Assembly: GCA_002269645.1 (NCBI GenBank) | Contig: NIVC01002949.1 | Span: 1-64,000, forward strand | Origin: Macrostomum lignano | Taxonomy: Eukaryota | DNA: 64,000 nucleotides | Direction of reading: 5' to 3' | Shown here: in pieces, positions 15,926-62,877 of the stretch | Layout: every line of letters starts with the position of its first letter | Position numbering within the stretch: the stretch's first letter is position 1 | Notes under the pieces: model-generated | What the model saw: the letters and a program-made list of their open reading frames with translations, nothing else | Databases searched by the model: none | Told to the model about the DNA's origin: nothing | Program-made: the position numbers and the translations under genes

Positions 15926-16447
15926 GTAAGTACATGTATGAGACGGATTTATTTTAAAACTTTATTTCTTGTATATGCCATTTACTGAGTAGGTGCGTAA
16001 AAATATGAGTTTACGTGTCAAGCTTCCATAAAATTAACAATAATCTTGCAGAAAACTACTGCAATAAGAGTACGAGTAGTAGTAGTACTAATAGTAGCGC
16101 GTTAGGCGTTCAGTCAAGCGTAATTCTTTGGCGGCAGAATTCAGCGAACCAAAATGTTCGCCAGTAGCATGACGTAGAGAAGGCCGAAAGCGCTTTTGAT
16201 GGTAGTCTGAAAAATTATTGCGGTTTTTTCGGCGGTTACCTTTACATATTGCAACTGCAGATGGCTAAGCTGGGGCTCTATAAGGTATTAAACCGACTAC
16301 GCCTATATTATATTACTAAGTTGTTTATAAGCTTAGTGAACCGCCAAACAAGGCTGCAAATATTGGCGCCCCTCAATGAAAATCCCAGCGTTCAGGTACG
16401 CCACTGATGAGCTTCAATAAAAGTTGCTTGATGCCAATAGTCGGGTA

Positions 16448-19461: not shown

Positions 19462-20877
19462 TCAAGACGCGGACAAGGTGTGGCCAGCGGCCGACATGCC
19501 GGCAAACAGCAGGCGCACCTGGCCAACATGGAGCAGGCAGCAATCAGCTGAGCAGTATTCACCGTCCCACTGAGGATGATCTATAGCCGGCTTCGAGCAG
19601 CCGTGTCTGGCGCAGAAACCGGCCTCTTCCGTAATCACCTTCTTCGGCTTTTTTATTGGCAGATTCTTTTGCTTTTCTTGTGTCTCTTTCTTCAATCTTT
19701 TCACCTTTTTAACTTCGGCAGATTGCTGATGCTGCTTTGGCTTTCGCTGGGTTTTTAGTTGGACTTTAGCCGGTTGTGCTTTAGGCTTAGCGACAACTTC
19801 GCTAAGCTGGTACTGCGGCTCGTGCAGCTGCTGCTGCGGCCTGTGTCCCAAGTTTACTGGCACAGGCAGAGAGTACGGCTTGTTAGAGCGGAGCGCCGAA
19901 CTCCGCTTGGCATAGGCAGCCTTGCCGGCCTGGCCCAGCCGCTGCCACATTCGTTCAATAGCCTGGCTGGCCTCGCCAAACGCCATGGCAGGCTGGTCGC
20001 GTTTCACCTGTGGCAGCGTGTCTTTAAAAAATAACGCGTAGGCCGATTGGACGGCTAAGGACGGAGCTGGGCGAGAGCCCTGACGATGACTCGTCAATAA
20101 TTGGCTAATAGGAGCGTCAAGCTCGGGCTCCGATTCGTCATCGCTATTCGAATCTTCATCAGCAGAATCATCGTCATCATCATTGCTATCTTCTTCCTCA
20201 TAGTCTTGAACGTAGTCGTCAACGCGACTTTGACGCGGTCGCTTCTGACTATTGGCATTGTTAGCAGAGTTGCCTGTACTGTTGACCGCCACTGAGTTGG
20301 GACGATTGTTGCCATTGGCAACAACTAGACTGGATAAATCGCCGTCAAAATCGTCGAATCGATAACATTGGATTAGCAATGGTTGCTGCTTCTGCTGTTG
20401 CTGTTGTCCAAATTGTTGGACCTGTAACTGCGGCAGAGGTTGGTGCAACTGCTGTGGCAATTGCCTATAGGCCTGCTGTGGAACTTGCTGTTGTTGTTGC
20501 TGTTGCGACACTTGGCCGCTAAAAGTTTGCTGCGGCAATTGCTGCTGGTAAATTTGCGAAGGCATTTGCTGCTGGTAGGTTTGCAAAGAAATTTGCTGTG
20601 GCTGATAAACTGGCTGTGGCTGCTTCTGCTGATAGGGTTGCTGAATGGCTTGCTGATAAAGCTGTCTGGGTGCTTGCTGGTACAGATGCTGAGGGATTTG
20701 CTGGGGAACTGTTGTTGTTTGTTGGGGAACTTGCTGGTTGGGATGCTGCGAGGCAGGTTGGTAAAGCTGCTGAAATGGAACCAGTTGACTTGGCTGCTGC
20801 TGAGCTGGTGCAGCTGGGGCCTGCCGCGGCCCAAGAATTATCATTGGTGGAGATACACTAGACCGGTTGTTCTCCAT
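19462..20877 (-). CDS. TOX: TOX-family HMG-box protein (TOX4-like)
   Basis: 471-aa ORF with a Q-rich N-terminus and an acidic tract. HMG box AVQSAYALFFKDTLPQVKRDQPAMAFGEASQAIERMWQRLGQAGKAAYAKR resembles TOX PVSAYALFFRDTQAAIK..ATFGEVSKIVASMW. The C-terminal motif CARHGCSKPAIDHPQWDGEYCSADCCLLH resembles TOX4 CVRSGCENPP..DWDNEYCSNECVVKH. Confidence 0.85.
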   Translation of the reverse strand: MENNRSSVSPPMIILGPRQAPAAPAQQQPSQLVPFQQLYQPASQHPNQQVPQQTTTVPQQIPQHLYQQAPRQLYQQAIQQPYQQKQPQPVYQPQQISLQTYQQQMPSQIYQQQLPQQTFSGQVSQQQQQQQVPQQAYRQLPQQLHQPLPQLQVQQFGQQQQQKQQPLLIQCYRFDDFDGDLSSLVVANGNNRPNSVAVNSTGNSANNANSQKRPRQSRVDDYVQDYEEEDSNDDDDDSADEDSNSDDESEPELDAPISQLLTSHRQGSRPAPSLAVQSAYALFFKDTLPQVKRDQPAMAFGEASQAIERMWQRLGQAGKAAYAKRSSALRSNKPYSLPVPVNLGHRPQQQLHEPQYQLSEVVAKPKAQPAKVQLKTQRKPKQHQQSAEVKKVKRLKKETQEKQKNLPIKKPKKVITEEAGFCARHGCSKPAIDHPQWDGEYCSADCCLLHVGQVRLLFAGMSAAGHTLSAS

Positions 20878-22985
20878 GGCAACTGCAGATTAGTGCAGCC
20901 AGTGGTGTAGCAATTCAATTCAAATTCTTTATAATTGATAGAAAACCATGAAATCATATAAATCAAAGTAAATTATTATTTATTAATGCAACCAGACAAA
21001 TCTTGCATTGATTAACATAAATATAATTATCAGAATAATATATAAACATATATAACCATTATGGTCAAGTTAGTTGATAATGCAATTAAGTCTTAATTGC
21101 AATTTGCAGTGTTGGGTAACTTCCAGCACTTATGGCACTCTTAAAGTGTTAAAGGCTACTTTGTTGTAAGTCTAGCCCTACTAGAACTATATAAATAAAA
21201 AAAATAACAGAACTATTTTGTCAATTTAACTATTTGCATTTTTATGTTAAATTGAAACATTAAAACATTTTTATACTACTTCTACTAATATTTAAAACTT
21301 TTATTTCTAATATTTTCAAATCAAATCACTTTTACAATTGTATAACTAAGCAAAGTAGAGAGTAAAGAGACTAACCTTGGTAGCCAATGGCCATATTAGG
21401 CAATTTTTGTATTAAAAATATAGGCCAAAGATGACAATTTAAATCTTATGAGATGTTTGTTCTATTTACTTTTAGAAAAAGAATACCAATTCCTATATAT
21501 CAATAATTCAAAATTTAAAGAAGTATATGTGACAGGCCTTTTGGCTCTGTCTTTCTAAACTCCTAACTATTGATGCTAGTATTTATTGAATATCCTACGG
21601 GCTGCCACTAAAGTTGTTACAGGGCTAAACCTTTTGTCTCTCTACTTAATGTACCTTTGCATAAATGTACTATTATCACTAGTAGCGTCTACTTATCTAC
21701 TTCTATTGGTAGCGTCTACTTATCTAATGGTAGCGGTTGTACATGTACTATACTTTTTGCCTGAGCAGTCTATTGGCACTGTCTACTCTTTTTACTCTTA
21801 TAAGTTCTCTCTCAGTCCTAGGCGTTCCCTGGATCAGAGGATCACAGCTCTATATTTTCCCTGCCCTGAAGCGATCTTCTCTCACTATGAAGCGGTTCTC
21901 CTACCCTGAGGCAACTTTATACACTCTCTTTAGGCTATTGCCCTAAGGCGATTTCTTGCTTTTAGCAGTTTTGAACTCTCCCAATATAGGGGTTTTTACT
22001 ATAGAAAAGAATAAGTCACTTGAACAATTTTCTTATCAAGTCTTAGCTATTGAAAGCTTTGCTAATAGAGCACACGAACGAGTTAGTCTTCTTGGCTTAT
22101 TCAGGGCTTCTATTTATACCAAAGCTTCTCATCATTTCAAACAAATAATAATTGCAAAAAATATTTTTGTAACTTACAACATTTAAACAAAAGATTCATT
22201 TTTAGCGTGGATTTTTAGTATATGGATTTGAACTAGAGTTTTCTAAGAAACAAAATGAGTATCTATTAGAACTATCATATAGTATCATACTTTTATTAAT
22301 GCATTGTCCCATATATCACCTTAGAATATCCATTAAAAGTTAAAAAAGCAAAAAATGATTTATCAATTTAATGGCAAATTATTTATAGTTTTAAAATATT
22401 TAAATAAAATTTTTAAATTACTCATTACTAAAGCTTAAGTATGCATATTGATTGTATACTGTTAGTTTTTTTATTTTCATATCTATTTTTTAAAGCACTG
22501 GCAAAATTTATATTTTTTTAGTTTAAATATTAGAAATATTTTATATTTAATCTGCTTAGGGCCTATTATAAAAAAATTAAACTTGAACATAATGTAAGGC
22601 CCAGATTAAAACAATTCATTTTATTAGATACTTATATATAGCATAAAACTAAAAAACAAATAAAATTGAAAAATAACGTTTTATACCTTTATAGCCATAT
22701 CTAATCCAAAAAAAATTGATTGAAGAGTTTTGTTAATGACTAGGGATTTTAACCATAGGGAGTCCTCCTTAAAGACCGTAGAAAATTTTGGGGGTTTTAA
22801 CCTTGGGGTTTTGGTTTGGACCATGGGCAATTGGGAATTAAAAAGGATAATTAAAGTAAAAGTTTTGCTTTTAGAAGCTTTTAATAAAATTTATTATAAT
22901 CTTTGGTAGTAGAATATGTAATTTTGTTAGCAGGATTCTTTCTAAGCAAAGTGCTCTATGATTTAGCAATGACATTGTCAAAATG

Positions 22986-23011
22986 TTAGGGTTAGGGTTA
23001 GGGTTAGGGTT
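22986..23011 (+). repeat. Short interstitial (TTAGGG)4
   Basis: Four exact TTAGGG units. Confidence 0.85.
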
Positions 23012-23360
23012 TGATTATTCTGTATATCTACTTCAATCACTGATAATAGGATCTTATTGTGAGCTTCAAGTTACAAGCAAACTGTCATCTAAACTATAAC
23101 AATTTTTCTTGACAAAATGTATAGTAGATAGATAGACATATACATATATGCAAGCAGACAAAGAGACAGATAGATACAGACAGACAGACAGAAATAGATG
23201 GACATAAATAGACTAATAGACATAGATAAATAGACAGATAGATCAACAAGCATTCAAGTAAAGGCAGATGGGAGAATAGATAAGTAGTCTGTCAAATCAC
23301 ATTTTCTAAAATGGTATTTAACAATGTTTTTCTTTTGTATATTTTTTTATTAGTGAGTTG

Positions 23361-23685
23361 GTAGTGCTTATCCCCATGGTACCATAGGAATAATTTCTGT
23401 CTTATTCTAATGGTACTATGGGAATCATTTTCTGCTTATCCACATGGCACACTGACGAGATAGCTGGCCCATCTTCTACATATGCCATGGGAATAATTTA
23501 GTTTAGTACTTACGGTTTAAATGCAGTATAACATAACATTGCTTGACAATTTGTTTAATAGAAGTAAAGATTTAATGTTTTTTTTATGCAAAAAAATGCT
23601 AGTCGTGGTGTTGATCCAAATCAATAGCTTCTTAGTATCCTCAATTCAAATTCCTTTTCAAAAAGCTATAAACTATTCATGTATA

Positions 23686-23739
<54 letters not shown>

Positions 23740-23920
23740 AATATGGCAGCTATCTCGTCAGTGTGCCATGCAAATAAGCAGAAAATTATTCCGACGGCAT
23801 ATGTAGAAGATGGGGCAGCTATCTCGTCAGTGTGCTGTGCGGATAAGCAGAAAATTATTCCCACGGTACCATTGGAATAATACAGAAATTATTCCTATGG
23901 TACCTGGGGATAAGCACTGC
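23361..23920. mobile_element. MITE-like element: ~150-bp inverted repeats enclosing a (TA)n tract
   Basis: 23361-23508 is the diverged reverse complement of about 23780-23920. The right arm has an internal partial duplication, and (TA)n lies at 23688-23735. Confidence 0.7.
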
Positions 23921-24129
23921 CTAGTGGGCATGAGTTTTACTTGTGATACTATTATTATACTAGCAGTTACATAGTAAATTATATAGTCATAGAAGCATAT
24001 ACTTTATGTATATCATAGGTAATGTCATTGATATAAAAACTGACAAACTTGCAATTGCAAAAAAACAAAACTGTATCAATCAACAATATATTATCCTTTA
24101 ATAGTAATTACCCTCTTATATAGCATCTT

Positions 24130-24340
24130 TATATCAGCTGCCTATAGCTATTTTTCTTCTAGCTGCTAAAACCAATGCAATGCTGTTTGCTTAACTTATT
24201 CATAATTTGCAAAACTCCTCTTGGAAAAGCCAGCCTTTGTCTTTTAGCCATTTGAACAAAAATCTATTGTACAAGTTAAAGTCTAGGGCTCTAGTCTAGG
24301 CTATAAGGACACTGCTAGAGCAGATTCACTCACTGTCTAG
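24130..24340 (-). mobile_element. Possible decayed Helitron Rep fragment
   Basis: The minus frame LYNRFLFKWLKDKGWLFQEEFCKL*..YKDA loosely resembles the Helitron GRLFQ motif region (CGG->TGG would restore R). Weak, by-eye similarity only. Confidence 0.25.
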
Positions 24341-25924
24341 TCCTATTGGAATAAGTGTGGAAAACCTGCAAATGCGTTATGCACAATATAGGGTCTAAAA
24401 TTATAGTTCAAAAATGTGATTTAACATAGAACATGTTAACTTTTTGCACTGAATACAAGCATAGTACTAATTAGATAATGAAGCATTTAGCCTTAATAAG
24501 ACAGTCATAGTTATTCTTGCTATTTATCTAAAATTGCAACATGCTGTGATACTACCTACCTTGACTCCAGCATCGAGTCTTTACGTGACACTTGAAAATT
24601 TTAAAATTACAATGGATGGTTAGATAGGGCCTATCTTTTGTCCACTTATTTCAATAGGGCTATCTAGACAGAAATCTGTAAGACTACAATAGCCTAATAC
24701 ATGTGTGACTGTGTGTTGTCTATTCAATGCTAGAAAATTAGCATAGGGCCTATACACTATAATACTACACTTAAGATTATATAATATATATGCGTATGCC
24801 TAAAAATTTGGGCTTGCGTTGGTTGCAAAACACTGGCTTAACACTAGTGTAGCTTTGAGAATATAAGCATGTACTCAAAATTTCTTAGGCGTGTATTTGT
24901 AATTATTCAATTTCATTTGGGCATGTACCTTTGTACCCAGTACCAAGTATAGACCTATTATATGATCTAGAGTATGGCTACAATAATAGACCTGAAAATA
25001 GGACTATGCTTTCAATATATTTGGGATACCACAATTATAATAGGCATGCCGATGGTAAATTATTAAATTTGTGCACTATGTAGGGGTAGGCCTAGGGAGT
25101 TGAAAGACAATGTCCTTGTACTTATAAGCAAATAAGATAAAATAGAATAGGCCTAAATCAAATGAAATGGAAAAAAAACACAAAAAAATAACGTTAATTC
25201 AAGAGGCATATATTGTCTCTAAATTGGATCATATTTTATAAGATACTTACAGGCTACTAATATATTTTATGGCCTAAGTCAATTAGTCAAGTTATCAATA
25301 TTTTCTATCTAAATCTAAAGAAGCCTAACAATTCAACTGTTGCAATTTTAGATAGCTCTATGTGGCTTGGCTATGTTATGTAGAAAGTGTATCTGCCTTT
25401 ATTGGGTTTGCCTTAGTTTAGTTTATTGCAAAGGAGGCTAATCGTTTTTATGACAAAGGTTAAGCTGTGTAAAGGTTTAGCTACAAATTAAATACAAGGA
25501 CTTCTAGACTAACAAGGTCTAGAAGTCCTTGATTAAATATTGTTAATATTTATTGTAATTCAATCAATATCTAACAAACAAAAACATTTACTAGATTCAA
25601 AAGTATGTAAATGACATTACTAAATGCTATGTTGTATGTATACTATTTTAAGTTATATACTTCAAGTAGTTAAGTTAAATTATTAAAATCATCTCATTTT
25701 AAGTTATTTTAAGCCATTTAAAGCTCAAACGAACGCGACCGCACCCTTGGTCCGTAAAAAAGAGATAGTGAAATAGGTATTAATTTAAAACAAACCAGCA
25801 ATATATTGTGTACTTAAAATAAAATATAAGTACGTTGAATATCTTTTGCTAAACATATTTTTTTAAAAACGTTTTTTTTGTTTTAATGTTTTGTTTCTTA
25901 TAAATCGGATTAAACGAACAGTAT

Positions 25925-25965
25925 GGCTCAGATCGCGCGGGCCCGATACGTCTGAGTGCTCTAGT
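25925..25965 (+). mobile_element. Candidate Helitron 3' terminus (GC hairpin followed by CTAG)
   Basis: ctcaga-tcg-cgcgggcc-cga-tacg-tctgag forms a hairpin, followed by tgctCTAG|t. CpG-rich, in contrast to its flanks. Confidence 0.35.
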
Positions 25966-27132
25966 ACAGGTAGTAGACACATGAAGCTGCAATTATGAAT
26001 GGCGACATTTCTACTTAACTTTCAAGAATTTAACTGATGCCAAAGATTTTACTTCTTATTAATATTAGCCATATACTTTTAAATGTACTATAGCTTCAAA
26101 AAGTCTAAGAAGATAATTTAGCCTTTAGAAAGGGGCCTTTCTTAGGCTTAGTAGGCTAAGCTAATTTTGTGATAACAAAATTGAATGTTAGGATGTGTTA
26201 TGACTCGTATGAAGATCAGAGAATTAATTAATCTCAATATGTAGTGGCATAAAATTTACAGAAAGTAGAAATATTTCTGTTGTCTGTAAAATCTGTAAAA
26301 TCTATTGTCTTGTCACCACTAGCTAGAAGCTAGTGCTGCCACTTAATAAGCTAAGTAATGATAAAAGGCCTACTATTATTAATAAGGTAGGCCTAGTTGA
26401 TATTTACTATTTAGCAAAGTTTTTAAATTGGTTGGTTGCCATTTTTCTAAATAAAAATCATCAAAATCAATCATGAAGTCAATCAAAATTCAACTAGGTC
26501 TAAAGAAGGGTTTCTTAATTCAATGCAAGTCAGTATGCAAAATGCAAATTTAAATTGTCTTTCTAATGACAATGACAGCCATTTGTATTGAACTTTATAA
26601 TTGCCATGCTTGTATATAGGCCCTAAGAGTTTAAATTCTAATTATCTTATTAGCATTCTACTAGGCCTACTAAGCCTAATTGTCACTAATTATTAGGGCC
26701 TAGCCTGATATATAGCATAGGCCTAAGTTATATTTACCATCATAAATATATAAACTACTAGAGAGAAAATTATGATAATTTTTTTAAATACCCATTAACC
26801 ATATTATTCACAAGAGTACCTATATTCATTACTTTGAGTAGGCCTAATAGATGCTACTATTTCTAGTTCAGTTTGGTTTAATATAGAATCATATTAAAAA
26901 ATTTTTATATATCTTTTTCATAGTTAAATTGCTATAGGCGTAGCTGTATATATCAAAAATTACAATTCTTTGATTCTTATATTTTGCATTTTACTTCAAT
27001 TTTATAGATTCTGCAGTTGATTCTATAATAATTTACTATTCTACTGAAGATTCTGCTCCAGATTCTACAATTTATTGGGTATTCCTTTTTGTATGCTAAT
27101 ATGATTATTTTTTTGTTTCCCATTAAAATGTT

Positions 27133-28268
27133 GGCAACCGATCAAAAGGGCGACAGATGAAAAGGGCGACAGTCAAAAGGGCGACAGGGTATTAGACCAA
27201 GAACTACTTAAGTGGAAGGACGGGAAACCTCGTTTCTTAGAAAATCTTAGAATCTTAGCAATAACAATTTTTGTGCTGACAATTTGTACTTGTATGTTAG
27301 AATGGGGTTCTAATATTTAATGTACGCTCATACATTGTACATTGAAACATAGATCAGTGGGGTTTATTTATTTCATTCACTGAAATCACTATACCATATA
27401 AGTGCTGAGTGTGGTTGCCACGCCTGAATTTAAAATTCATTGCAATCTTGGAGAGAACTTGGAAAAGACAGTACAATGCATGTAAAAAGTACATGTACAA
27501 GTAAAGTGCACATGTAGGAGTAAAAGTGCACATGGACGCAGAGTACTAATTAAGGTGCATATCATGGTGTACACGTATATGTACCTGAAAATGTGTACTT
27601 TCCATAGAAAAAAAAGAAAAAATCAAACTCGACGGGGTGCGCGCGCCCTGTGCGCCCCCTTTAAATCCGCTACTGCTAGGCAGCCAGAAAAATATTTTTT
27701 TCTTTACTTCAACAGGCGGTTAGGACCAACAACGACTTAGAGAGCTGGCATCGCGCTCTAAACTACAGAGCCCAGCGAGGAAACATCCAATTCTACCTGC
27801 TCATCAAGCTCCTATTCAATGAAGCGCGAATGATCCCCGTAGAGGTGCAGCTCCTCTCCCAAGGAGTAATGCGCCGCGTACAGCGCAACAGATACCGAAG
27901 TATGCAGGCCCAGTACTTCAAATACTGGAGAGAATTCAGGCGTGGTTGCTCGGCGGATGATCTACTGAAGGCGGTTAGTGAAATAAATGGACCTCACTGA
28001 ACCACATTTTAACATTTAATAGTGTGTCCAATACGTGTCCAGCTTTTATACAACCCCATTTTAACTGCTCGTACAATTTTAACAACGCATTTTAACAAAT
28101 ACAAGTATGATACATGTTTACTGCTTTTCACAAATACTTTTAATGTACGTGGAACTCGTATTTTCAATATAAATACACTGTAACTGTCGCCCTTTTGACT
28201 GTCGCCCTTTTGACTGTCGCCCTTTTAACTGTCGCCCTTTTGATCTGTCGCCCTTTTGACCTGTAGCC
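27133..28268 (+). mobile_element. Young non-autonomous Mutator (MULE) element with 9-bp TSD
   Basis: TSD taaaatgtt at 27124-27132 and 28269-28277. Termini GGCAACCGATCAAAAGGGCGACAG and the reverse complement GGCTACAGGTCAAAAGGGCGACAG, with inverted subterminal aaaagggcgacag repeats. The interior at 27722-28000 encodes the transposase C-terminus RTNNDLESWHRALN..QRNRYRSMQAQYFKYWREF..DDLLKAVS. Confidence 0.9.
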
Positions 28269-28639
28269 TAAAATGTTAAAGTCTATAAGCCATATTAATA
28301 TTTGTAAAAACTTGGAATTCAAAATTCACCAAGTTTTAGTCTTGCTAAGGCCAATATACTGTTTGAATGATTTTTATATTTCTTTTAGATCTTCTTAGGT
28401 AAAATAACAACTGGGTTAAGAAAAGGTTCATAGCTTATCAAATTCAAGTTAGACAATGTAAAGAGAAGTTGCTAATTGTAAAATTATTGTTATAGGTTAT
28501 AATACGAGCTATTTGTTAGGTTATAGTATTTGGGCTAGCTAATTAAAATGTAAAGTTAAAATACATTGTACGTCAAACGTTAAAAGTAGAAAGATTTTAA
28601 GTTAGTGTAAGTTAAAGTAAAACAGCCTTGTTACAACAT

Positions 28640-29640
28640 TGCAGATCAGTTGCAATAAGACAACTAGCCTAAATAGCTATCTATATAGCTTTTAATGTAG
28701 CAGAATGACATCTGCCACCTTGATTTAAATGTGGTATTAGTAAAGGTACAAGGCTATAAAGCCCTAGTAGGGTTATGCTCTGCTAGGATGCCAATTAGAG
28801 AAAATTAATATATGCAGTAATAAGTCTCTTCAATCTTAAGTGCCAACCTTTAACAACATTGTTCATCCTGTCAATAAGCAGGTACTGAGAAAGACTAAAC
28901 ACTTTACAGATAGAATATAGCAATCATGTTGAATTGTTATAGTTGTATAGGTCTATATGCACTATATGCACTATGCACTATAGTTATATAGTGCATATGA
29001 TGTTATCAATGGCCACAGGCCTTCCAATGAGCTTTAATTTTGCCAGCTGACAAATAAGGCAAGGCCATTAGCTAGCTGCACAAAGTGTGCATCTAGGTCT
29101 ATATGTTGCATATGCTAGGATAAAAGGCAAATTCTGCAATAAACTGCTTGGCTATAATAAAAGATGTAGCCATTTAGTTCCACATTTAGGAAGACTCCCA
29201 AGGTGCCTATCAGGCTGCAAGTTTAAAGTCTAACATTGCATGTATGATAGCAGCTTCAATAAGCATGCAATGAAGAGCAGTAGATATAGCCACATAACCA
29301 GCTACTGTGTGTTTAGACATTATTACCTAAGCAAATGCATAGATCTATCTTGTTCCACCAGATTTAACTGTACCATGTGTTGCTATATAATTGTACAAAT
29401 GGTTCCTTAACTATACTGAATATCCTATCAAGAAACCAGTCCATGTAGTATAATAGTGCATTCAGCTACTCAGGACTTGACAGCACAATGTGCTTCTTCC
29501 TTTGTCTGTGCAACTGCCATATCTGCATGCAGAAAAGGTTGAGGGATATAATTGAAAGCTAAGGTTGAGAGCTATAATGCAAGTGTTGCTGGGTGCTCAT
29601 GCTGTTGCCTTTGCTTTTATCAAAGCCTATTTGCATGATA
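28640..29640 (-). pseudogene. Heavily mutated MULE transposase relic
   Basis: Minus-strand frames give, in the correct order, FLHADMAV..WFLDRIFSIVKEPFVQLYS..HGTVKSG..VIMSKHT..MLDFKLAA..GVFLNVELNGYIFYYSQAVY..LMALPYLSAGKI..RMNNVVKGWH. These correspond to the MULE motifs DGTF, DFE, GCxFH, LMALPYLP and RTNNxVEGWH. Many stops and frameshifts. Confidence 0.8.
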
Positions 29641-30263
29641 TGCTAACTAGTCTAAGTTTGGAGGCAAGTATATTTAGAGCTTAAGTTCAAATTAGCTTAA
29701 GAAGCAAAAAAGAATAAGAATCAAGTTGAAAATAGGGAAAAATAAGTTACATTTTTTAGTCCAAACTAAGTCATAATCCTAGTGTAATTTCAACTAAAAC
29801 ACAAAAGCTGTTTGTATTTGCAGTAACTTCACTTTTATACTATTAGTTGAAAGGGGGATTTTAGTTACTAATAAAGTAGCAACTGCACAGTGTGAATCGA
29901 ACATACATGTGCAACCTCCCTGGTTTACACTGGCTTCTGTGCAACTTACTTTTTGATAAAAATGAGACTTGCCTATGAAAGACACCTAAGCAAAATTACC
30001 GGTTTTCGGGTAAATGACAGGAGTAACTATAGATGTACTATCTAGGCTAAATACCTCGTCATGTAATTAGTACCACGTCTGTATTTATTCTGGTAAGCAT
30101 TTTTGCGACTTACCTTTAATCTTCATTTCAATGAAACTACCAACGACAATTTGCTGTCATCCCCGCTTATTGAATCTGTTTAAGCTGGACTGCTCTACTA
30201 AATCAAAGTCCTATCTGCTAGCATAGTAATTGCTAATTGAAAGATTAACAAATCAATCTAAGC

Positions 30264-33200
30264 ATGACGCGCAGCCGTAAGCGAGCAATTAGCGAGACTG
30301 AAAACAACAACAATGCCTCCATGGCCGACAGCGGCGCTGGTGGCCCAGCCCGTAAAACTGCCCGCGCTGACACTGCCGCGGCTGCTGGCGCCTCATCGTC
30401 AGGCGCTGACTCGGCTGCTGTTGATAAAGTGCGACTGCACTTTAATAGTACGCCTGGTCAAGTGCTGACGCTGGGCGAGGGCGACACTGGCCAGCTTGGC
30501 CTGGGTGACGAAGTGCTGGGTAGAAAGCGGCCGGCCAAGGTTGACGGGCTCTCCAATGTTGTACAGGTGAGCCTTTTTCTAGCTTGAATTCAAGTAGCTC
30601 AAGGTTGAGTTGACAGGTGAGCATGATTTACAGGAGAATGACATTTATAAATTGTTTATCGAGTGAAGTGCAATTATTAGGGTTGAGAAGTGAAAGCATT
30701 TTCTGATGAGTGGAACATCATTATCGGGTGATATTGAAATGATTATTAGGTGAGTGAAATTATTATCGGGTCAGAGTGAAATGATTATCAGGTGAGAGTG
30801 AAATGATTATCGAGTGAGAGTAAAATGATTATCAGGTGAGAGTGAAATGATTATCGGGTGAGAGTAAAATGATTATCAGGTGAGAGTGAAATGATTATCG
30901 GGTGAGAGTAAAATGATTATCGGGTGAGAGTAAAATGATTATCAGGTGAGAGTGAAATGATTATCGGGTGAGAGTAAAATGATTATCAGGTGAGAGTGAA
31001 ATGATTATCGGGTGAGAGTAAAATGATTATCAGGTGAGAGTGAAATTATTATCGAGTGAGAGTAAAATGATTATCGGGTCAGAGTGAAATGATTATCGGG
31101 TGAGAGTAAAATGATTTTCGGCTGAGATTAAATTGATTATCGGGTGGGAGATTAGAGGGAAATAATTAGTGGGCGAGAGTGATGAGGCCAGAGGTTGGAA
31201 TGTATGCTTTGAGCTCCAACTCCAATCCCACAGGCAGTGGCAGGCGGCATGCACACGGTCTGTCTAACAGCCGACGGTGTTGTGTACACATTTGGCTGCA
31301 ATGACGAACAAGCGCTTGGCCGATCCACCAGCGAAGACGGCAGCGAATACCTGCCCGGCCAGGTTGGAGAGGGCCTGCCGGACCCGGCCGAGGATCCGGT
31401 GGTGCACATCTCGGCTGGGGACAGCCACACCGCGGCAGTGACCCGCACCGGCCGGCTGTACCTGTGGGGCACCTTCAGGGATAGCAACGGCATTATTGGT
31501 AATGTTGGAAATCGGGGCGCTGCTGCACATTGAGATCTGTTCAAATCCAGAGTGCTACCCCTATACCCTGTTGGGCCAGAGTGCTACCCCTATACCCTGT
31601 TAGGCCAGAGTGCTACCCTTATACCCTGTGAGGCCAGGGTGGTACCCCTATACCCTGTTGGGCCAGAGTGCTACCCTTATACCCTGTTAGCCCAGAGTGC
31701 TACCCCTATACTCTGTGAGGCCAGGGTTGTTGTGGACAAGTTCTGCTATTTGTACGCTTTGTACAAGTGCGAATTCACATGTGCTTATGCTACGCTTGTA
31801 TGCAGCTGGGAAGCTGTCTATGGTGCTGACGGCGCCTTGGGTACAGGCCCTCGGATGTGATCTGAGGCAAACAGCCCATAGGAAATAAAAGGAATAAGAA
31901 ATAGCCAGAACTAAGGCTACAAGCAGACCAAAATCGGCTGCATTTTATTTTCTATCAAACCTCCGCCTTTTATTTGTTGGTTAAAGACACAACAAGGGTG
32001 GTACCCTTATACCCTGTTAGCCCAGAGTGCTACCCTTATACCCTGTGAGGCCGGGGTGGTGCCTCTCTCTCAGGCCTTAACCTTCAGTAAATTATCCCCC
32101 TCTCAATACTGAGCTCTCGAACTGAGCGACACTCCTAAAAATAAAGCAACCTGCTCCACCACTCCGCCATGCCCTCCAGGCCTGACCCGCGCCAAGGAGG
32201 TGTCCGCCCGACCAATTCAATTGGAATTTCCCGAGCCCGGCGTCCGAGTGGCCAAGACCGCCTCCGGCGCCTGCCATGTTGTCTGCCTGACCAGAGACGG
32301 CCGCGTGTTCACCCTGGGCTGCGGCGAGCAGGGCCAGCTCGGCCGGGTGAACGAACGCCTGGCCGGCGCTCACGGCGGCCGCAATGGTATGCAACTGTTT
32401 CTGGGGCCGCGCGAAGTTCGAATCCGCGGCTCGCCTTATTTCACAGACGTCTGGGCCGGGGCCTACGTCAGCTTCGCCAAGTCGGCTAAGAAAGGCGCCA
32501 TCTACGCCTGGGGACTCAACAATTATTACCAGCTGGGCACGGGCGATTTGGAGAACAAATTCTTTCCTGCGTTGGCTACCGAGTTCTCTGGTAAGCTTAT
32601 GTTAGTGTATTTTGTATGACTAATTAGCTGACGAGGTATTATAATATTCATAAAGAATTGTCATACTCATAAACCAAAAATTGCCCATAAACCACCCCAG
32701 AATCACCCATAAACCACCCCAGAATCGCCCATAAACCACCCCAGAATCGCCCATAAACCACCCCAGAATCGCCCATAAACCACCCCAGAATCACCCATAA
32801 ACCACCCCAGAATCGCCCATAAACCACCCCAGAATCACCCATAAACCACCCAGAATCGCCCATAAACCACCCCAGAATCACCCATAAACCACTCCAGAAT
32901 CACCCATAAACCACCCAGAATCACCCATAAACCACCCAGAATCACCCATAAACCACTCCAGAATCACCCATAAACCACCCCAGAATCACCCATAAACCAC
33001 CCCAGAATCGCCCATAAACCACTCCAGAATCACCCATAAACCACCCTCAGAATGGCCCACGAGGAAAAAAATTTACACTACAGAGATGGTACTTCATTAA
33101 TTTCTTATTAGATTTATTCATATTAGACTTAATTTCGTATATTGGATTTCAGATAGTATACATTTTGCAAAGGTGTTGGGGCCCCTTGACGCAACGCCTT

Positions 33201-34905: not shown

Positions 34906-36246
34906 TGGAATTCCCCAGGGCATCTTTGCTCATTGCTCTGATTTCCAATCGTTGATTTCATTAACAAAATCAAGCCGTAATTTAAAATTCTAAATTTTTG
35001 ACTATCTTCTAATCCTGCTTAAGTTTTTGGTGATTTTGCAATCATATTTCATAATTTCGCATCTTAGCTATTAGATTGCAGTGTTTAGTTTTGTTTAATT
35101 CGTGTTGAGCCTTTTACAATTCTTTAAAATATGAATTGTCATATTGATAAATATTAAATCTGTTTTCAGCGTGGCGTCCTGTAGTGCTTCAGCCTCATTA
35201 CCGCACTAATTGGTTGTCAAATTAAACTTGACAATTTATTATATTTATTAACTTATTAAACTTGCAGCGGGTGCCGCTTTGGCTTTTTGGTGCTTATCAA
35301 AGTCGCGTAAATAAAGTTACTTTTAACTGTCTCAGCAGCTCATGTCAACTTTAACTTCTGTAATGGATTAGCAAAGAAAACTGAGCATCGGTGCCTTTCA
35401 ACATTGTTTTCTGCTTTTTTTCATCTGACCGAGACACATCTGAGAGAAATCGAGTTTCATTTTCGTAGCTTCTTGTGTTTGTGCGGCCCCGATAGAAAAA
35501 AGATCACTTACAAACTCAAAAGTTTGCACAGTTTAAGGACTGCTATAATAATACTTGCTCTCGGCAATCTAAGCGAGATTGTACGCTTGTAATTGCGAAC
35601 TGAAAGAGAGATATTGGCACTTGTAGAAGATATGAAGACCCGAGCAGCAGAAACTCTGTCCCCCCCTCCTCCTGTCCAATAGCGCTGGCCTGGCTGACTT
35701 TCTATTATTGCTTTGCCAAAGTGTACAGCGCACCCGCCCCCAATCTGGCTCTGTACTTTTGGTTCAGGCTTGGCCAAACAAAAACGAATGGCTGTGGGCG
35801 TTCAGGCGCGTGTCTTCATTGCTTCTTTTGGTCGCATTGGGGTTAGAGAATGCAGTGCTCAGCGAGACGGCTATGAGCACAGGGCAGCGGGGGTGGCGGG
35901 TGTTGAATCGCTACTCGCTTTCCCATTGGCTGTGCGGTGCACACCTGACACCTCGCTACGTGCACTTAACTCTCTAGCCCGGCCCTGTCCCCCCACTAAT
36001 TCTCCTTCTCTACGCCCGCCCTGCTCAGCAGGCCCTTGCCATACGGAAGAGGTCTAGAGCAGAGCTACATAGAGGCAGCAAGCACATTAGCGACTGCCAG
36101 AAGCAAAGCTTACAGGCCGCAGGTCACCATAGAGGTCTCTTGTTGCAGCAGAATTTTTCTCAGCCAGGAGGAACAAGCGTCTTTTGACTGAGGCACCGCG
36201 AGCTGCTCACTGACAGCAAAGCGCCTGTCTGTCACGGGCTGTCGTC

Positions 36247-36953
36247 ATGTCTGTCGCCGACAATCCGCAGCTAGCCCTGTTCCGCTCGGTTGCCAAGGGC
36301 GACTGCGCCTCGGTGCTCGAGCTGATCCGCCAGGGCATACCGGTGAACTGCAAAGACGAGGCCAACTTCAATTTGACGCCGCTAATCCGGGCCGCCTGGT
36401 CGGACAATGAAGACATGATCCGGCTGCTCATCGTCCACGGCGCCGCTCTGAACGACTGCGAGAACCAGACCGGCGCCACGGCGCTGCACATCGCCGCCCA
36501 GCAAAACAACCAGCGCGTGGCCAAGTCGCTCATTGAAGCGCAGGCTCACGTCGACGCTGTAGACAAGAATCAGCAGACTCCCCTGATGGCCTGCGCCGCC
36601 CTGAGCCATCTGGAGATCGGCAAGGAGCTGCTCAAGGCCGGAGCTGACACCGACATGCAGCAGAAGAAAGGATTCACAGCGTTGCACTTCTGCGTCGAGC
36701 ACAACCATCTGGAATTCGCCAGGCTGCTGGTGGAGTTCGACGCCAAGCTGGACGTGGCTACAAAGCCGGAGGCCGACAGGCACACGCCGTTCACCATGGC
36801 GGCTCTGATGGGCCAACTGGAGCTGCTGCAGCTGCTGTCGAACGCCGGGGCCGACATTCACATGCGCTGCAGCCGGGGCAACGCGTTGGAGCTGGCCAGG
36901 CAGAGCGGCGTGCAGGAGGCGGTCGCCTTCCTTGACGTTCTCTACAAGCAGAG
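36247..36953 (+). CDS. Ankyrin repeat exon
   Basis: ORF 36247-36957 with repeated TPL/TALH ankyrin motifs. Its TGA lies inside a GTGAGG donor site. Confidence 0.9.
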
Positions 36954-37777
36954 GTGAGGCGGATGGCTCACCACTTTCACTGGTTGCTAAAGTAGGTGGT
37001 AATTTAAGCCACGAGGGCCAACCCTCAAGGCACAGAGGCACAGAGAGCCTGACGATTAGAAAGACATGGCCGCTGTACATCCTGTGTGAGTGTGTGTATG
37101 AGAGCGTGCCTGTACTCAGTGACGCAGGACTCAGAGCAACCCCTGGCATCAAGACTTCGAGAAACCTCATTCATCAATAAGTTTGACCAGTTTGCTAAAA
37201 ATTTACCGAAATGCCAATCGAATTGTTTGCGTGACAAAAACTTTTGGATTGGTATTTACACGAGTACAATGTTGCTACATTATGCTACTCTCGCCAGGCA
37301 CATCGAGGAGAGCACGATGAGCATCCCGCGGCAATTGGATCGGCCGCAGCAGCAGTCGGAGTCGGACACCGAGACTTCCGAGACCGAGACGGAGACCTCC
37401 GAGGACGACACGGATGGCGAGACGGCAGCGGCAGGCCAATCTGGCGCCATCCACAGCTCCGCCCAGCTCAGGGTGCCGGCCCGGGGTCAGCCGGTGCACC
37501 GGGTCCAGTCAGACCGTCGCCTGGCGCCCTCTGACCAGGCCGAGGAGCATCGGACAGGCCGCAGCCGAACTCCGGAGAATCGCTGGCAGCAGCGCCAGCA
37601 GCAGGGAGCCGCCGCCGTGGCCGCCGTAGCCGCTGCAGCTGAACAGCAGCATCAGCAGCCTCTCGGCCACCGCCGCCAGATCAGCGCCGGCGGCTCCCCG
37701 GCGCCGTCCGCTCGCACTCCTGCGCGACGGCACAGGGAGCATCCGGCTGATCAGGTGCGCAACCTCCGCCTGGATGC

Positions 37778-37819
<42 letters not shown>

Positions 37820-39089
37820 ATCCCCTCGTCAGCGCTCAGCCACCGGCGGCAGCGAGCTCGGCGCAGTCGAGGGCATCAGCAACAGCTTCCGCACCTGGAA
37901 GATCAAGCGAAACGACAAGCCAATCGGCTCCGGCTCGTTCGGCGTCGTCTACCGGGCATTCACGGACAAGAACCAGTTTGTAGCTGTCAAGGTGGTGAAG
38001 GTGGCGAACAGCGCCAACCCGCAGCAGCTCAAGCAGGCCATCCGCAACGAGGAGAAAGGCGTCCGGCTGCTCAGCCGGCTCAACCACCGCAACATCCTTC
38101 GCTTCCTGAAGACCGACCGCGACCATCTGGGGAATTTTCTCATCTTCACCGAGCTGCTGTCCGGCAACAGCCTGTCCGGCATTCTGGAGGAGTACGGCGT
38201 GCTCACCGAGGACGGAATCGTGAACTTCACCAGACAGGTTGGAATTGGGGAGAGTCTGGGATCTCGTAGAAATTTTCGGAGCAACAACGTTTAGGTTTTG
38301 CTGACCGAAGTTTTAGGTTCTGGCGACCGAAAAATGGGTTGTATATTTAAGAAGAATGGCAGCGGGGGGATTCCCGCTGATTTCAAAGTTCAATTGGCCT
38401 TTGACAATGTTCAATACTTGCTACTTATTAATTACTAATTACCGCAATGTTTTTTACGTACTCACTAGTCGCTACTTGCTAATTACTACCTACTAATCTA
38501 CTACTTACTACTTACTACCTACTACTTACTACTTACTACTTACTACTTACTACTTGCTACTCCCTGTTTACTATAGGAGCTCCCATTCAACTGAACTTCC
38601 CCGCAGATCTGCTCCGCCCTGGACTACATTCACACCTGCAACCCACCGGTGCTGCATCGCGATCTGAAGTGCTCAAACGTGATGCTGACTAACGAGGGCA
38701 TCATCAAACTGATCGACTTCGGCCTGGCCAAGGAGATCCTCACCTCCATCGCCTACAATCCCACTGGCATTGTTGGCACGCCGTGCTTCATCGCGCCCGA
38801 GATTCTGGACGGCCGGCATTTCACGGACAAATCGGACATCTGGTCGCTGGGCTGCACCCTGTTCGAGATGGCCACCGGGGCGCCGCCGAACGCCGACAAG
38901 CAGAGCGTCAACGCCGTGATGTTCGCCATCTGCAACAAGCCGATGCCCAAGATGCCGGTGCGGCACTCCCGCAACCTACACGCCTTCTACAATGCCTGCG
39001 TGCAGAAGCAGCCCAGGCTGCGGCCCTCAGCTGCCGAGCTGCTCAACTCACCGCTATTGAAGGCCGCTTCTACGCACACCGAAGTGTGA
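36247..39089 (+). CDS. Ankyrin-repeat + STE11/MAP3K-like Ser/Thr kinase (predicted single gene, 3 exons)
   Basis: Exon 36247-36953 encodes about 6 ankyrin repeats ([35 protein letters not shown]) and ends at donor AG|gtgagg (phase 2). It joins cgccag|G at 37298 (R-HIEESTM), runs to 38237, and continues at 38607-39089. The kinase has [30 protein letters not shown] and [14 protein letters not shown]. Confidence 0.8.
38465..38560. repeat. Microsatellite (ctactta)n
   Basis: Located in the kinase intron. Confidence 0.85.
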
Positions 39090-40414: not shown

Positions 40415-42570
40415 GACCCTCACCCTCTGAATGTCCCCCAATCACCCTCACGCTGAATGTCCCCCAATCACCCTCACCCTCTGAATGTCCCCCAATCACC
40501 CTCACCCTCTGAATGTCCCCCAATCACCCTCACCCTCTGAATGTCCCCCAATCACCCTCACCCTCTGAATGTCCTCCAATCACCCTCACCCTCTGAATGT
40601 CCCCCAATCACCCTCACCCTCTGAATGTCCCCAATCACCCTCACCCTCTGAATGTCCCCCAATCACCCTCACCCTCTGAATGTCCCCCAATCACCCTCAC
40701 CCTCTGAATGTCCTCCAATCACCCTCACCCTCTGAATGTCCCCAATCACCCTCACCCTCTGAATGTCCCCCAATCACCCTCACCCTCTGAATGTCCTCCA
40801 ATCACCCTCACCCTCTGAATGTCCCCCAATCACCCTCACCCTCTGAATGTCCCCAATCACCCTCACCCTCTGAATGTCCCCCAATCACCCTCACCCTCTG
40901 AATGTCCTCCAATCACCCTCACCCTCTGAATGTCCCCCAATCACCCTCACCCTCTGAATGTCCCCCAATCACCCTCACCCTCTGAATGTCCCCCAATCAC
41001 CCTCACCCTCTGAATGTCCCCCAATCACCCTCACCCTCTGAATGTCCCCAATCACCCTCACCCTCTGAATGTCTTCCAATCACCCTCACCCTCTGAATGT
41101 CCCCCAATCACCCTCACCCTCTGAATGTCCTCCAATCACCCTCACCCTCTGAATGTCCCCCAATCACCCTCACCCTCTGAATGTCCCCCAATCACCCTCA
41201 CCCTCTGAATGTCCCCAATCACCCTCACCCTCTGAATGTCCCCCAATCACCCTCACCCTCTGAATGTCCCCCAATCACCCTCACCCTCTGAATGTCCCCC
41301 AATCACCCTCACCCTCTGAATGTCCTCCAATCACCCTCACCCTCTGAATGTCCCCCAATCACCCTCACCCTCTGAATGTCCCCCAATCACCCTCACCCTC
41401 TGAATGTCCTCCAATCACCCTCACCCTCTGAATGTTCCCCAATCACCCTCACCCTCTGAATGTCCCCCAATCACCCTCACCCTCTGAATGTCTTCCAATC
41501 ACCCTCACCCTCTGAATGTCCCCCAATCACCCTCACCCTCTGAATGTCCTCCAATCACCCTCACCCTCTGAATGTCCCCCAATCACCCTCACCCTCTGAA
41601 TGTCCCCCAATCACCCTCACCCTCTGAATGTCCTCCAATCACCCTCACCCTCTGAATGTCCCCCAATCACCCTCACCCTCTGAATGTCCCCCAATCACCC
41701 TCACCCTCTGAATGTCCCCCAATCACCCTCACCCTCTGAATGTCCTCCAATCACCCTCACCCTCTGAATGTCCCCCAATCACCCTCACCCTCTGAATGTC
41801 CCCAATCACCCTCACCCTCTGAATGTCCCCCAATCACCCTCACCCTCTGAATGTCCCCCAATCACCCTCACCCTCTGAATGTCCTCCAATCACCCTCACC
41901 CTCTGAATGTCCCCCAATCACCCTCACCCTCTGAATGTCCCCCAATCACCCTCACCCTCTGAATGTCCTCCAATCACCCTCACCCTCTGAATGTTCCCCA
42001 ATCACCCTCACCCTCTGAATGTCCCCCAATCACCCTCACCCTCTGAATGTCTTCCAATCACCCTCACCCTCTGAATGTCCCCCAATCACCCTCACCCTCT
42101 GAATGTCCTCCAATCACCCTCACCCTCTGAATGTCCCCCAATCACCCTCACCCTCTGAATGTCCCCCAATCACCCTCACCCTCTGAATGTCCTCCAATCA
42201 CCCTCACCCTCTGAATGTCCCCCAATCACCCTCACCCTCTGAATGTCCTCCAATCACACTCACCCTCTGAATGTCCCCCAATCACCCTCACCCTCTGAAT
42301 GTCCTCCAATCACCCTCACGCTGAATGAAGTTCCCCCAATCACTCTCACCCCAAAAGAATCCCTCTCACCCCCAATCACTCTCACCCCAATCACTCTCAC
42401 CCCAATCACTCTCACCCCAATCACTCTCACCCCCAATCACCCTCACCCCCAATCACTCTCACCCCCAATCACTCTCACCCCCAATCACTCTCACCCCCAA
42501 TCACTCTCACCCCCAATCACTCTCACCCCCAATCACTCTCACCCCCAAAATCCCTGTCACCCCCAATGTC
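40415..42570. repeat. Minisatellite, 28 bp unit (ccctcaccctctgaatgtcccccaatca), collapsing to a 16-17 bp unit at the 3' end
   Basis: About 68 copies of the long unit, then ccccaatcactctcac units from about 42340. Confidence 0.97.
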
Positions 42571-58984: not shown

Positions 58985-59031
<47 letters not shown>

Positions 59032-62833: not shown

Positions 62834-62877
62834 GCATGAAGGAGAGGCGTATCTATGACATAGTGGGATGACAAAGG

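What the first reader, a model, noticed from the sequence alone, without database searches (positions are those of the whole stretch)
28580..29897. RIP-like C-to-T hypermutation (CpA and CpG to TpA) of an old MULE transposase in an animal genome
Seen: by manual reading there is no CpG between about 28580 and 29897 (~1.3 kb), although GpC is common and TpA is abundant. The minus strand still encodes the ordered MULE motifs. Inferred: the deviations from conserved residues are mostly single transitions in CpA/TpG context: DGTF->DRIF (GGG ACA->AGG ATA, 29421-29426), DFE->DFK (TTT GAA->TTT AAA, 29222-29230), FPN->FLN (CCA->CTA), GCxFH->GYIFY (TGC->TAC, CAT->TAT, 29157-29168), Q->stop (CAG->TAG) and VEGWH->VKGWH. 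Classic CpG losses are also present (RTNN->RMNN, KRT->KHT). Established: CpA->TpA bias in repeats is the signature of fungal repeat-induced point mutation, whereas animal 5mC decay is normally CpG-restricted. This suggests a genome-defence mutator or heavy germline non-CpG methylation of transposons. The ancestral codons are inferred from family consensus, not observed.
Basis: partly seen in the sequence, partly recalled or inferred. Interest (0 to 1): 0.85.

Follow-up and report, generated by a model that had tools for sequence, protein, structure and literature searches.

The report
CpG-free decayed MULE transposase relic
This is an old, broken copy of a Mutator-like transposon gene in the flatworm Macrostomum lignano that has lost every CpG; it carries only a mild CpA-to-TpA bias that the neighbouring DNA shares, so it looks like ordinary methylation-type decay and not a fungal-style RIP defence.

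Summary
The window is Macrostomum lignano, assembly Mlig_3_7. There is no CpG in 28579-29897 (about 41 expected from base composition, 10-14 at the local CpG-poor background). The minus strand carries a collinear, frameshifted, stop-ridden MULE/FLYWCH transposase relic.

At conserved residues, all 8 non-CpG G:C>A:T transitions sit in CpA/TpG context. Two are directly confirmed by a duplicated copy of the locus that still reads DFE and FH.

The RIP-like reading fails for these reasons:
- CpA/TpG are enriched, not depleted (O/E 1.3). The substrate index is 1.43 and the composite RIP index is -0.26.
- About 75% of obligate CpA/TpG codons (H, Q, W, C) survive, against 0% of CpGs.
- The same 1.5-2.8-fold CpA bias appears in flanking non-relic DNA.
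- The relic does not diverge faster than its flanks between the duplicates.
- A young MULE inserted 300 bp away is unmutated (CpG O/E 0.89).
- A toy simulation fits strong CpG decay with a 1-3-fold CpA bias, and does not fit a bias of 10-fold or more.

Best explanation: a neutral pseudogene with saturating 5mC-type CpG decay (M. lignano keeps DNMT1 and DNMT3) plus AT-biased drift. Interest is low to moderate. TE-targeted methylation in a flatworm remains an open residual question.

The parts
28579..29897 (.). CpG-free zone (1319 bp, GC 35%, GpC O/E 1.97, CpA/TpG O/E about 1.3, TpA O/E 1.08)
   Evidence: Shuffles gave a mean of 40.6 CpG and never 0. The duplicated copy L002 is also CpG-free over its 1300 aligned bases.
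28707..29535 (-). Decayed MULE/FLYWCH-family transposase pseudogene: 15 in-frame stops and 5 frame changes in my stitched reading. The extent is approximate and the N-terminal FLYWCH part was not detected.
   Evidence: Stitched unrepaired translation scores 45.0 bits against a profile of nine PF10551/PF04500 proteins; best of 2000 shuffles is 9.7.
29382..29495 (-). Relic fragment holding the DGTF...QL motif, now DRIF (profile positions 164-201)
   Evidence: hmmsearch i-E 8e-4; tblastn E 0.003-0.035 with three proteins.
29207..29326 (-). Relic fragment LLpnKt...Y...DFELA, now DFKLAA (profile positions 216-255). L002 still reads DFE here.
29103..29195 (-). Relic fragment vFPN..GCfFH.sQAvyRk, now VFLNVELNGYIFYYSQAVYCR (profile positions 260-290). 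L002 still reads FH.
28813..28872 (-). Relic fragment RTNNvvEGWH, now RMNNVVKGWH (profile positions 370-389)
27133..28268 (+). Young 1136-bp non-autonomous MULE-type insertion. It has terminal inverted repeats with 15-bp subterminal tandem repeats and CpG O/E 0.89. It is absent from the duplicated locus, which shows an empty site.
27124..27132 (.). Left 9-bp target-site duplication TAAAATGTT of the young MULE
28269..28277 (.). Right 9-bp target-site duplication TAAAATGTT of the young MULE
27668..27979 (+). C-terminal MULE transposase fragment (RTNNDLESWH...) inside the young element
   Evidence: hmmsearch i-E 1e-7, profile positions 353-451
21000..27132 (.). AT-rich, CpG-poor intergenic block used as comparator (GC 30%, CpG O/E 0.35, GpC 1.63, TA 1.06, composite RIP index -0.08)
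   Evidence: divergence spectrum
30264..30566 (+). First coding exon of an RCC1-family gene. The relic lies about 370-1700 bp upstream of its ATG. The exon end is inferred from a GT donor.
   Evidence: the L002 gene call carries PF00415 RCC1

Best explanation
A MULE (Mutator-like, FLYWCH-type) DNA transposon inserted upstream of an RCC1-family gene in the Macrostomum lignano lineage before the recent duplication of this region. It lost function and has since evolved as neutral DNA.

1. Saturating CpG>TpG/CpA decay, the signature of germline 5-methylcytosine deamination. This removed every CpG and left an excess of TpG/CpA.
2. A general G:C>A:T-biased drift with a modest neighbour effect, CpA > CpT > CpC by roughly 2-3-fold. 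This bias also operates in adjacent non-relic DNA.

Because several invariant transposase residues (H, C, W, and T/P/E/G next to A or T) can only change visibly through CpA/TpG transitions, the decay reads as 'CpA>TpA everywhere' at the motifs.

Shown: the CpG absence, the MULE identity, the context counts, the duplicate comparison and the compositional indices. Inferred: that 5mC was the cause of the CpG loss, and that the element itself was more heavily methylated than its surroundings.
For: - Zero CpG with reciprocal CpA/TpG excess: O/E 1.32/1.27, against 1.05/1.01 in the neighbouring AT-rich block.
- M. lignano retains DNMT1 and DNMT3 and has low-level 5mC (PMC11292947, PMC9246332, PMC10658182).
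- CpGs in the adjacent AT-rich block are still more mutable than other Cs: 9/29 vs 92/693, p=0.013.
- Internal control: no conserved Arg codon keeps CpG, but 8 of 10 conserved H/Q/W/C codons keep CpA/TpG.
- The CpA bias is present outside the relic: YA 0.130, YT 0.089, YC 0.050 overall; YA vs YT p=0.02 and YA vs YC p=0.0009.
- Relic divergence equals flank divergence between the duplicates.
- The toy forward simulation reproduces CpG of about 0-2, CA/TG O/E 1.2-1.3, TA O/E 1.0-1.05 and composite index -0.1 to -0.4 only with CpG rate >=30x and CpA rate 1-3x.
- The young MULE 300 bp away is intact in composition: CpG O/E 0.89, composite index -0.01.
Against: - All 8 non-CpG transitions at conserved residues being CpA-type is still somewhat more extreme than the background bias predicts (P about 0.008 with a 0.54 share). 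The bias may have been stronger in the relic's past.
- Recent CpG hypermutability in the flanking block is only 2-3x, whereas reaching zero CpG in the simulation needs about 30x. This requires element-specific heavy methylation or a CpG-poor founder.
- No methylation data for this locus were available.
- The comparator block may itself be old repeat DNA.
- The homeolog spectrum is unpolarised and small (156 transitions).
- The model does not explain GpC O/E of about 2.
Confidence: 0.7

Rival explanations
1. RIP-like, homology-triggered or TE-directed cytosine deamination: a dedicated mutator hits CpA and CpG in repeated DNA and inactivated this MULE.
For: All 8 inferred non-CpG transitions at conserved residues are CpA/TpG-type, and 10:1 G:C>A:T over A:T>G:C in the strict set. 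Two CpA>TpA events are directly seen against L002. The locus sits in an AT-rich block that recalls fungal AT isochores.
Against: - CpA/TpG are enriched, the substrate index is 1.43 and the composite index is -0.26.
- About 75-80% of obligate CpA/TpG codons survive.
- The simulation with CpA bias >=10x gives CA/TG O/E <=1.07, a positive composite index and leftover CpGs.
- The same moderate bias occurs in flanking DNA.
- The relic shows no excess divergence between the duplicates.
- The neighbouring young MULE transposed after the duplication and is unmutated.
- In my literature search RIP turned up only in fungal papers.
Confidence: 0.04
2. TE- or heterochromatin-targeted DNA methylation that includes non-CpG (CpA) sites (DNMT3-type). 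Deamination of 5mCpG and, less often, 5mCpA in AT-rich TE-relic blocks gives CpG extinction plus a CpA>TpA bias.
For: - CpG depletion is confined to AT-rich blocks and is most extreme in the relic. Exons and GC-moderate non-coding DNA keep CpG O/E 0.7-1.1.
- CpG is hypermutable in the AT-rich block but not in the GC-moderate region (1/252).
- The CpA bias is strongest in the AT-rich block (0.19 vs 0.10 vs 0.07).
- DNMT1 and DNMT3 are retained, and genome-wide methylation patterns in free-living flatworms were reported as unknown in 2022.
Against: A 2-3x CpA effect needs no methylation, because neighbour effects of this size are common (my own knowledge, not tested here). Within the relic's recent divergence CpA equals CpT. 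The GC-moderate region has too few differences (20) to be a fair control. There are no methylation data.
Confidence: 0.16
3. The element was already CpG-poor when it inserted, either as a family adapted to a methylating host or after horizontal transfer from a heavily methylated genome. Only ordinary AT drift followed.
For: The CpG-free zone coincides roughly with the transposase remnant and ends sharply. Background CpG decay (2-3x) seems too slow to erase about 40-55 CpGs.
Against: Three or four conserved-residue changes are best read as in-situ CpG decay: R>C CGC>TGC, R>Q CGA>CAA and T>M ACG>ATG. The CpA/TpG excess indicates that many CpGs were converted within this sequence. The only other MULE in the window is CpG-rich.
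Confidence: 0.1

Closest known systems
5-methylcytosine deamination decay of CpG in old transposon copies (as in vertebrate and other methylating genomes)
   Same: CpG loss is complete, with a reciprocal TpG/CpA excess, and is confined to a dead TE in a genome that keeps DNMT1 and DNMT3. Both strands are affected equally.
   Different: M. lignano is reported to have only low global 5mC, and its methylation map is undescribed. Depletion here is in AT-rich intergenic/TE-relic DNA. The exons seen in this window show no gene-body CpG depletion.
Fungal repeat-induced point mutation (RIP; Neurospora-type CpA>TpA)
   Same: G:C>A:T transitions, many creating TpA, inactivating a transposase with stop codons. 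The context ranking CpA > CpT > CpC is the same.
   Different: The substrate dinucleotides are not depleted and the composite index is negative. The bias is only 2-3x, is not restricted to the repeat, and shows no evidence of multi-hit bursts. CpG is the saturated target. The organism is an animal, and no RID-type enzyme is known there (not tested).
Animal MULE / FLYWCH-domain Mutator-like transposases (Pfam PF10551 + PF04500)
   Same: Ordered motifs DGTF...QL, DFE, FPN..GC.FH..QA..R and RTNN..EGWH, with about 30% identity to nine such proteins.
   Different: It is a pseudogene with 15 stops and 5 frame changes. No TIRs, TSD or FLYWCH finger were recognisable.
APOBEC-type editing of mobile elements
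   Same: C>T / G>A transitions in a mobile element.
   Different: There is no strand asymmetry (5 G>A and 3 C>T among the CpA-type events on the coding strand). The context is CpA/CpG, not TpC/CpC. The element is a DNA transposon with no cDNA stage.

Membership tests
RIP / RIP-like hypermutation | Depletion of the target dinucleotide: (CpA+TpG)/(ApC+GpT) < 1.03 and composite RIP index > 0 | tested here: not met
   Substrate index 1.43 and composite index -0.26 in the zone; both halves alike.
RIP / RIP-like hypermutation | Product excess: TpA/ApT > 0.89 and clearly above unaffected DNA | tested here: inconclusive
   TpA/ApT is 1.16, but it is 1.10 in the neighbouring block and 1.06 in the unmutated young MULE. 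TpA O/E is only 1.08.
RIP / RIP-like hypermutation | Mutation restricted to duplicated sequence, sparing adjacent unique DNA | tested here: not met
   The same CpA>CpT>CpC ranking occurs in flanking DNA, and relic divergence equals flank divergence between duplicates. Caveat: the flank may itself be old repeat DNA.
RIP / RIP-like hypermutation | Strong preference for CpA over other contexts (Neurospora roughly 10-fold over CpC) | tested here: inconclusive
   8 of 8 polarised non-CpG transitions are CpA-type. The larger unpolarised sample gives only 1.5x over CpT and 2.8x over CpC. Simulation excludes >=10x.
RIP / RIP-like hypermutation | RID/DIM-2-type cytosine methyltransferase-like machinery acting premeiotically | not testable with these tools
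   There is no way to search the M. lignano proteome here. The literature reports only DNMT1 and DNMT3.
5mC-driven CpG decay | CpG deficit with matching TpG/CpA surplus | tested here: met
   0 CpG against 40.6 expected; CpA 1.32 and TpG 1.27 O/E against about 1.0 in neighbours.
5mC-driven CpG decay | Host has maintenance and de novo CpG methyltransferases | not testable with these tools
   Literature only: DNMT1 and DNMT3 conserved, low 5mC (PMC11292947, PMC9246332, PMC10658182).
5mC-driven CpG decay | The locus is methylated in the germline | not testable with these tools
   No methylome data are accessible. Indirect support only: CpG is 2.3x more mutable than other Cs in the adjacent block.
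MULE / Mutator-like transposase (PF10551) | Collinear DDE-domain motifs matching family profiles | tested here: met
   Four collinear fragments; 45.0 bits against <=9.7 for shuffles. Pfam itself did not report it on raw or stitched translations. The profile members were retrieved with a repaired query.
MULE / Mutator-like transposase (PF10551) | Long TIRs and a 9-11-bp target-site duplication | tested here: not met
   None was found for the relic. They are present for the neighbouring young element: 9-bp TSD TAAAATGTT and TIRs.
APOBEC-like editing | Strand-asymmetric clusters in TpC or CpC context | tested here: not met
   Events fall on both strands, none in CpC/TpC-defined classes. TpC/GpA O/E is 0.6-0.7, but this holds across all non-coding DNA in the window.

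The most novel reading that the evidence does not exclude
In M. lignano, whose methylome pattern is undescribed, germline DNA methylation is aimed at AT-rich TE-relic or intergenic blocks and not at gene bodies, and it includes some CpA methylation. This would drive CpG extinction and a CpA>TpA mutational bias specifically in such blocks. It would be an animal analogue of a methylation-based, slowly mutagenic transposon defence, though not RIP.
Probability: 0.15. Interest if true: 0.55.

Novelty: new member of a known kind. Interest (0 to 1): 0.22.

Why it matters
A real RIP-like mutator in an animal would be a major finding, and this evidence argues against one. What remains is smaller.

First, it is a clean example of how codon structure makes ordinary decay of H/C/W/Q-rich catalytic motifs look like CpA-targeted mutation.

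Second, it gives a hint from one 64-kb window plus one 21-kb duplicate. CpG depletion in this flatworm is mosaic. It affects AT-rich TE-relic DNA and spares exons. That pattern could guide the first proper methylome analysis of a free-living flatworm that still has DNMT1 and DNMT3.

Tried and rejected
- Pfam on raw six-frame and on unrepaired stitched translations: no MULE hit.
- Word-indexed homolog search with the unrepaired stitched piece: nothing.
- tblastn of single real MULE proteins gave only weak collinear hits, E 0.003-0.15. This is why a profile and a shuffle test were used.
- I tried to collect other genomic copies for a consensus through exact-protein look-ups of ORFs in the young MULE and of an ankyrin ORF: none on record.
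- Only one duplicated locus was reachable. The divergence spectrum is therefore unpolarised, except at conserved codons.
- Wasik et al. 2015, the primary methylation report, is not held.
The repeat or unique status of the comparator block therefore stays open.
- APOBEC-type editing was considered and rejected, for lack of strand asymmetry and the wrong context.
- Rfam and ARAGORN found nothing relevant at the locus.

Full report
**Origin of the window**

A 471-aa HMG-box ORF (19462-20877, minus strand) is recorded on contig NIVC01002949.1 of GCA_002269645.1. The literature identifies that accession as the Macrostomum lignano Mlig_3_7 assembly. The window is 46% GC and very heterogeneous. It has GC-rich exons, many minisatellites, and AT-rich blocks at 1-1000 and about 21000-30000.

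**Observation**

- CpGs lie at 28578 and 29898, with none between them.
- The 1319-bp zone has GC 35.2%, GpC O/E 1.97, CpA 1.32, TpG 1.27 and TpA 1.08.
- Mononucleotide shuffles give 40.6 CpG on average and never fewer than 21.
- At the CpG density or O/E of the neighbouring AT-rich DNA (O/E 0.35), 10-14 CpGs are still expected. That gives P(0) between 7e-7 and 4e-5, or about 2e-3 after allowing for the number of gaps.
- The longer CpG-free runs elsewhere in the window are strand-skewed tandem repeats.
- The absence of CpG is therefore real, non-random, and more extreme than the local background.

**MULE identity**

1. Pfam and a word-indexed homolog search see nothing in raw or stitched translations.
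2. I repaired stops, frameshifts and six motif residues. That query retrieved nine proteins annotated PF10551 (MULE), six of them also PF04500 (FLYWCH), at about 30% identity.
3. The repair makes that retrieval partly circular, so I tested the unrepaired DNA against a profile built from the nine real proteins.
4. Four minus-strand pieces match profile positions 164-201, 216-255, 260-290 and 370-389. They are in the right order and spacing: 682 nt against 225 profile positions.
5. The unrepaired stitched translation scores 45.0 bits, against at most 9.7 for 2000 shuffles.
6. The relic carries 15 in-frame stops and 5 frame changes. No TIRs or TSD were found for it.

**A second, young MULE**

- At 27133-28268 there is a 1136-bp element with inverted termini, 15-bp subterminal repeats and a perfect 9-bp TSD, TAAAATGTT.
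- It holds a C-terminal transposase fragment (i-E 1e-7).
- It is CpG-rich (O/E 0.89, composite RIP index -0.01).
- It is absent from the duplicated locus, which shows the empty site.
- MULEs have therefore moved here recently without being mutated.

**Duplicate locus**

The HMG protein has one 96%-identical paralogue, on NIVC01003703.1 (L002). This fits the known redundancy of the assembly.

- L002 carries the same relic, also with 0 CpG. The insertion and the CpG loss therefore predate the duplication.
- Divergence is about 7% from 28270 to 29225. It then drops abruptly to about 0.3% from 29226 through RCC1 exon 1.
- This is a conversion or recombination boundary inside compositionally uniform relic DNA. 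Divergence differences along the locus therefore reflect history and not composition.
- Left-half relic divergence (about 6.5%) equals that of its flank (7.8%) and of the AT-rich block (7.1%). There is no ongoing relic-specific hypermutation.

**Test of the CpA claim at codons**

I aligned the stitched relic to the nine proteins and took conserved columns.

- 39 of 71 conserved residues have changed.
- Single-step G:C>A:T transitions number 8 in CpA/TpG context: G>R, T>I, E>K twice, P>L, C>Y, H>Y and W>stop.
- A further 3-4 are at CpG (R>C, R>Q, T>M), and none is at CpT or CpC.
- There are 3 A:T>G:C transitions and 21 transversions, mostly conservative I/L/F swaps that may predate inactivation.
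- A codon-aware null puts only about 33% of non-CpG nonsynonymous opportunities in CpA/TpG context. That gives P(8/8) of about 1.6e-4.
- L002 still has GAA (E) at 29224 and CAT (H) at 29159. These are two directly observed CpA>TpA events.

**Why it is nevertheless not RIP-like**

1. Composition. The target dinucleotides are enriched. (CpA+TpG)/(ApC+GpT) is 1.43 and the composite RIP index is -0.26 in both halves. TpA O/E is 1.08, like the neighbours.
2. Internal control. 8 of 10 conserved H/Q/W/C codons, whose CpA/TpG is obligatory, are intact at that dinucleotide. No conserved Arg codon retains CpG. CpG is saturated and CpA is not.
3. Background. Across alignable intergenic DNA between the duplicates, transitions per conserved C are 0.217 at CpG, 0.130 at CpA, 0.089 at CpT and 0.050 at CpC. 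CpA vs CpT gives p=0.02 and CpA vs CpC gives p=0.0009. In the non-relic AT-rich block the values are 0.31, 0.19, 0.10 and 0.07. Inside the relic CpA equals CpT (0.059 vs 0.060). The CpA bias is a moderate property of the local neutral spectrum. With it, the expected CpA share at conserved codons rises to about 0.54 and P(8/8) to about 0.008. That is still a little extreme, but the sample is small and was noticed post hoc.
4. Toy forward simulation. It started from a 45%-GC proxy and ran down to 35% GC. It reproduces the observed CpG count, CA/TG O/E, TA O/E and indices only with CpG rate >=30x and CpA rate 1-3x. A CpA rate >=10x gives CA/TG O/E <=1.07, a positive composite index and surviving CpGs. 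The ancestor is assumed, so this is illustrative.
5. The neighbouring young MULE is unmutated.

**Mechanism**

The most economical reading is a dead transposon under neutral evolution. It combines 5mC-type CpG decay with AT-biased drift that has a 2-3x CpA neighbour effect.

M. lignano is reported to retain DNMT1 and DNMT3 and to have low 5mC.

- That the relic is more CpG-depleted than its surroundings suggests it was itself a stronger methylation target, or that it arrived CpG-poor. Neither could be tested.
- CpG depletion in this window is mosaic. AT-rich blocks have O/E 0.15-0.36, while exons and GC-moderate non-coding DNA have 0.7-1.1.
- CpG is hypermutable in the AT-rich block (p=0.013) but not detectably so in the GC-moderate region (1/252, with few events).
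- This pattern is the basis of the residual 'novel' reading: TE/AT-block-targeted methylation, perhaps including CpA.

**Limits**

- Other genomic copies of the family could not be fetched, so no family consensus spectrum exists here.
- The duplicate comparison is unpolarised and modest in size.
- The comparator block may itself be old repeat DNA.
- The methylation evidence is second-hand.
- The model does not explain GpC O/E of about 2.

**Verdict**

Its headline, RIP-like hypermutation or a genome-defence mutator, is not supported.

Noticed in passing
27133-28268 (TSDs 27124-27132 and 28269-28277): Young 1136-bp non-autonomous MULE with TIRs built of 15-bp subterminal repeats (CTGTCGCCCTTTTGA), a 9-bp TSD TAAAATGTT and a C-terminal transposase fragment. 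It is absent from the duplicated locus L002 (empty site), so it inserted after the duplication or is polymorphic.
   Followed up: partly
about 29226 (window) vs L002: Divergence between the two duplicated loci switches abruptly from about 7% (28270-29225) to about 0.3% (29226 to at least 30660, covering the RCC1 promoter and exon 1). Elsewhere it is 0.7% (10.8-19.4 kb) and 7% or more (AT-rich block). This suggests a mosaic of gene conversion or recombination between homeologous or extra-chromosome copies.
   Followed up: partly
whole window, non-coding parts: GpC O/E is unusually high (1.5-2.2) and TpC/GpA low (0.6-0.8) across non-coding DNA. In the duplicate comparison, Cs preceded by G show about half the transition frequency of other Cs (0.053 vs 0.10-0.14). 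This context effect is unexplained.
   Followed up: partly
exons e.g. 2001-3000, 36001-38000, 59001-60000, 62001-63000 vs 21000-27000: Exonic windows keep CpG O/E 0.85-1.1, while AT-rich intergenic blocks are at 0.15-0.36. This is the opposite of the usual invertebrate gene-body-methylation footprint. The sample is only this one window.
   Followed up: no
11618-13076, 40451-42319, 59939-61622; also 14916-15935, 30664-31235, 31518-31749: Large strand-skewed minisatellite arrays, some completely lacking CpG or G, and 22-bp and 29-bp tandem arrays in the first RCC1 intron. Copy number differs between the window and L002.
   Followed up: no
46469-46538 (+): Weak Rfam tRNA hit (32 bits, gathering 29, E 0.009) that ARAGORN does not call. 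It sits in a repeat-rich region.
   Followed up: no
29880-29925 (-): The translation ...GGCTCMFDSHCAVATLLVTK... upstream of the detected MULE domain might be the remains of the FLYWCH zinc finger (C-x6-C-A...T). If so, the relic would extend to about 29990, past the first CpG at 29898. The profile does not support this.
   Followed up: no
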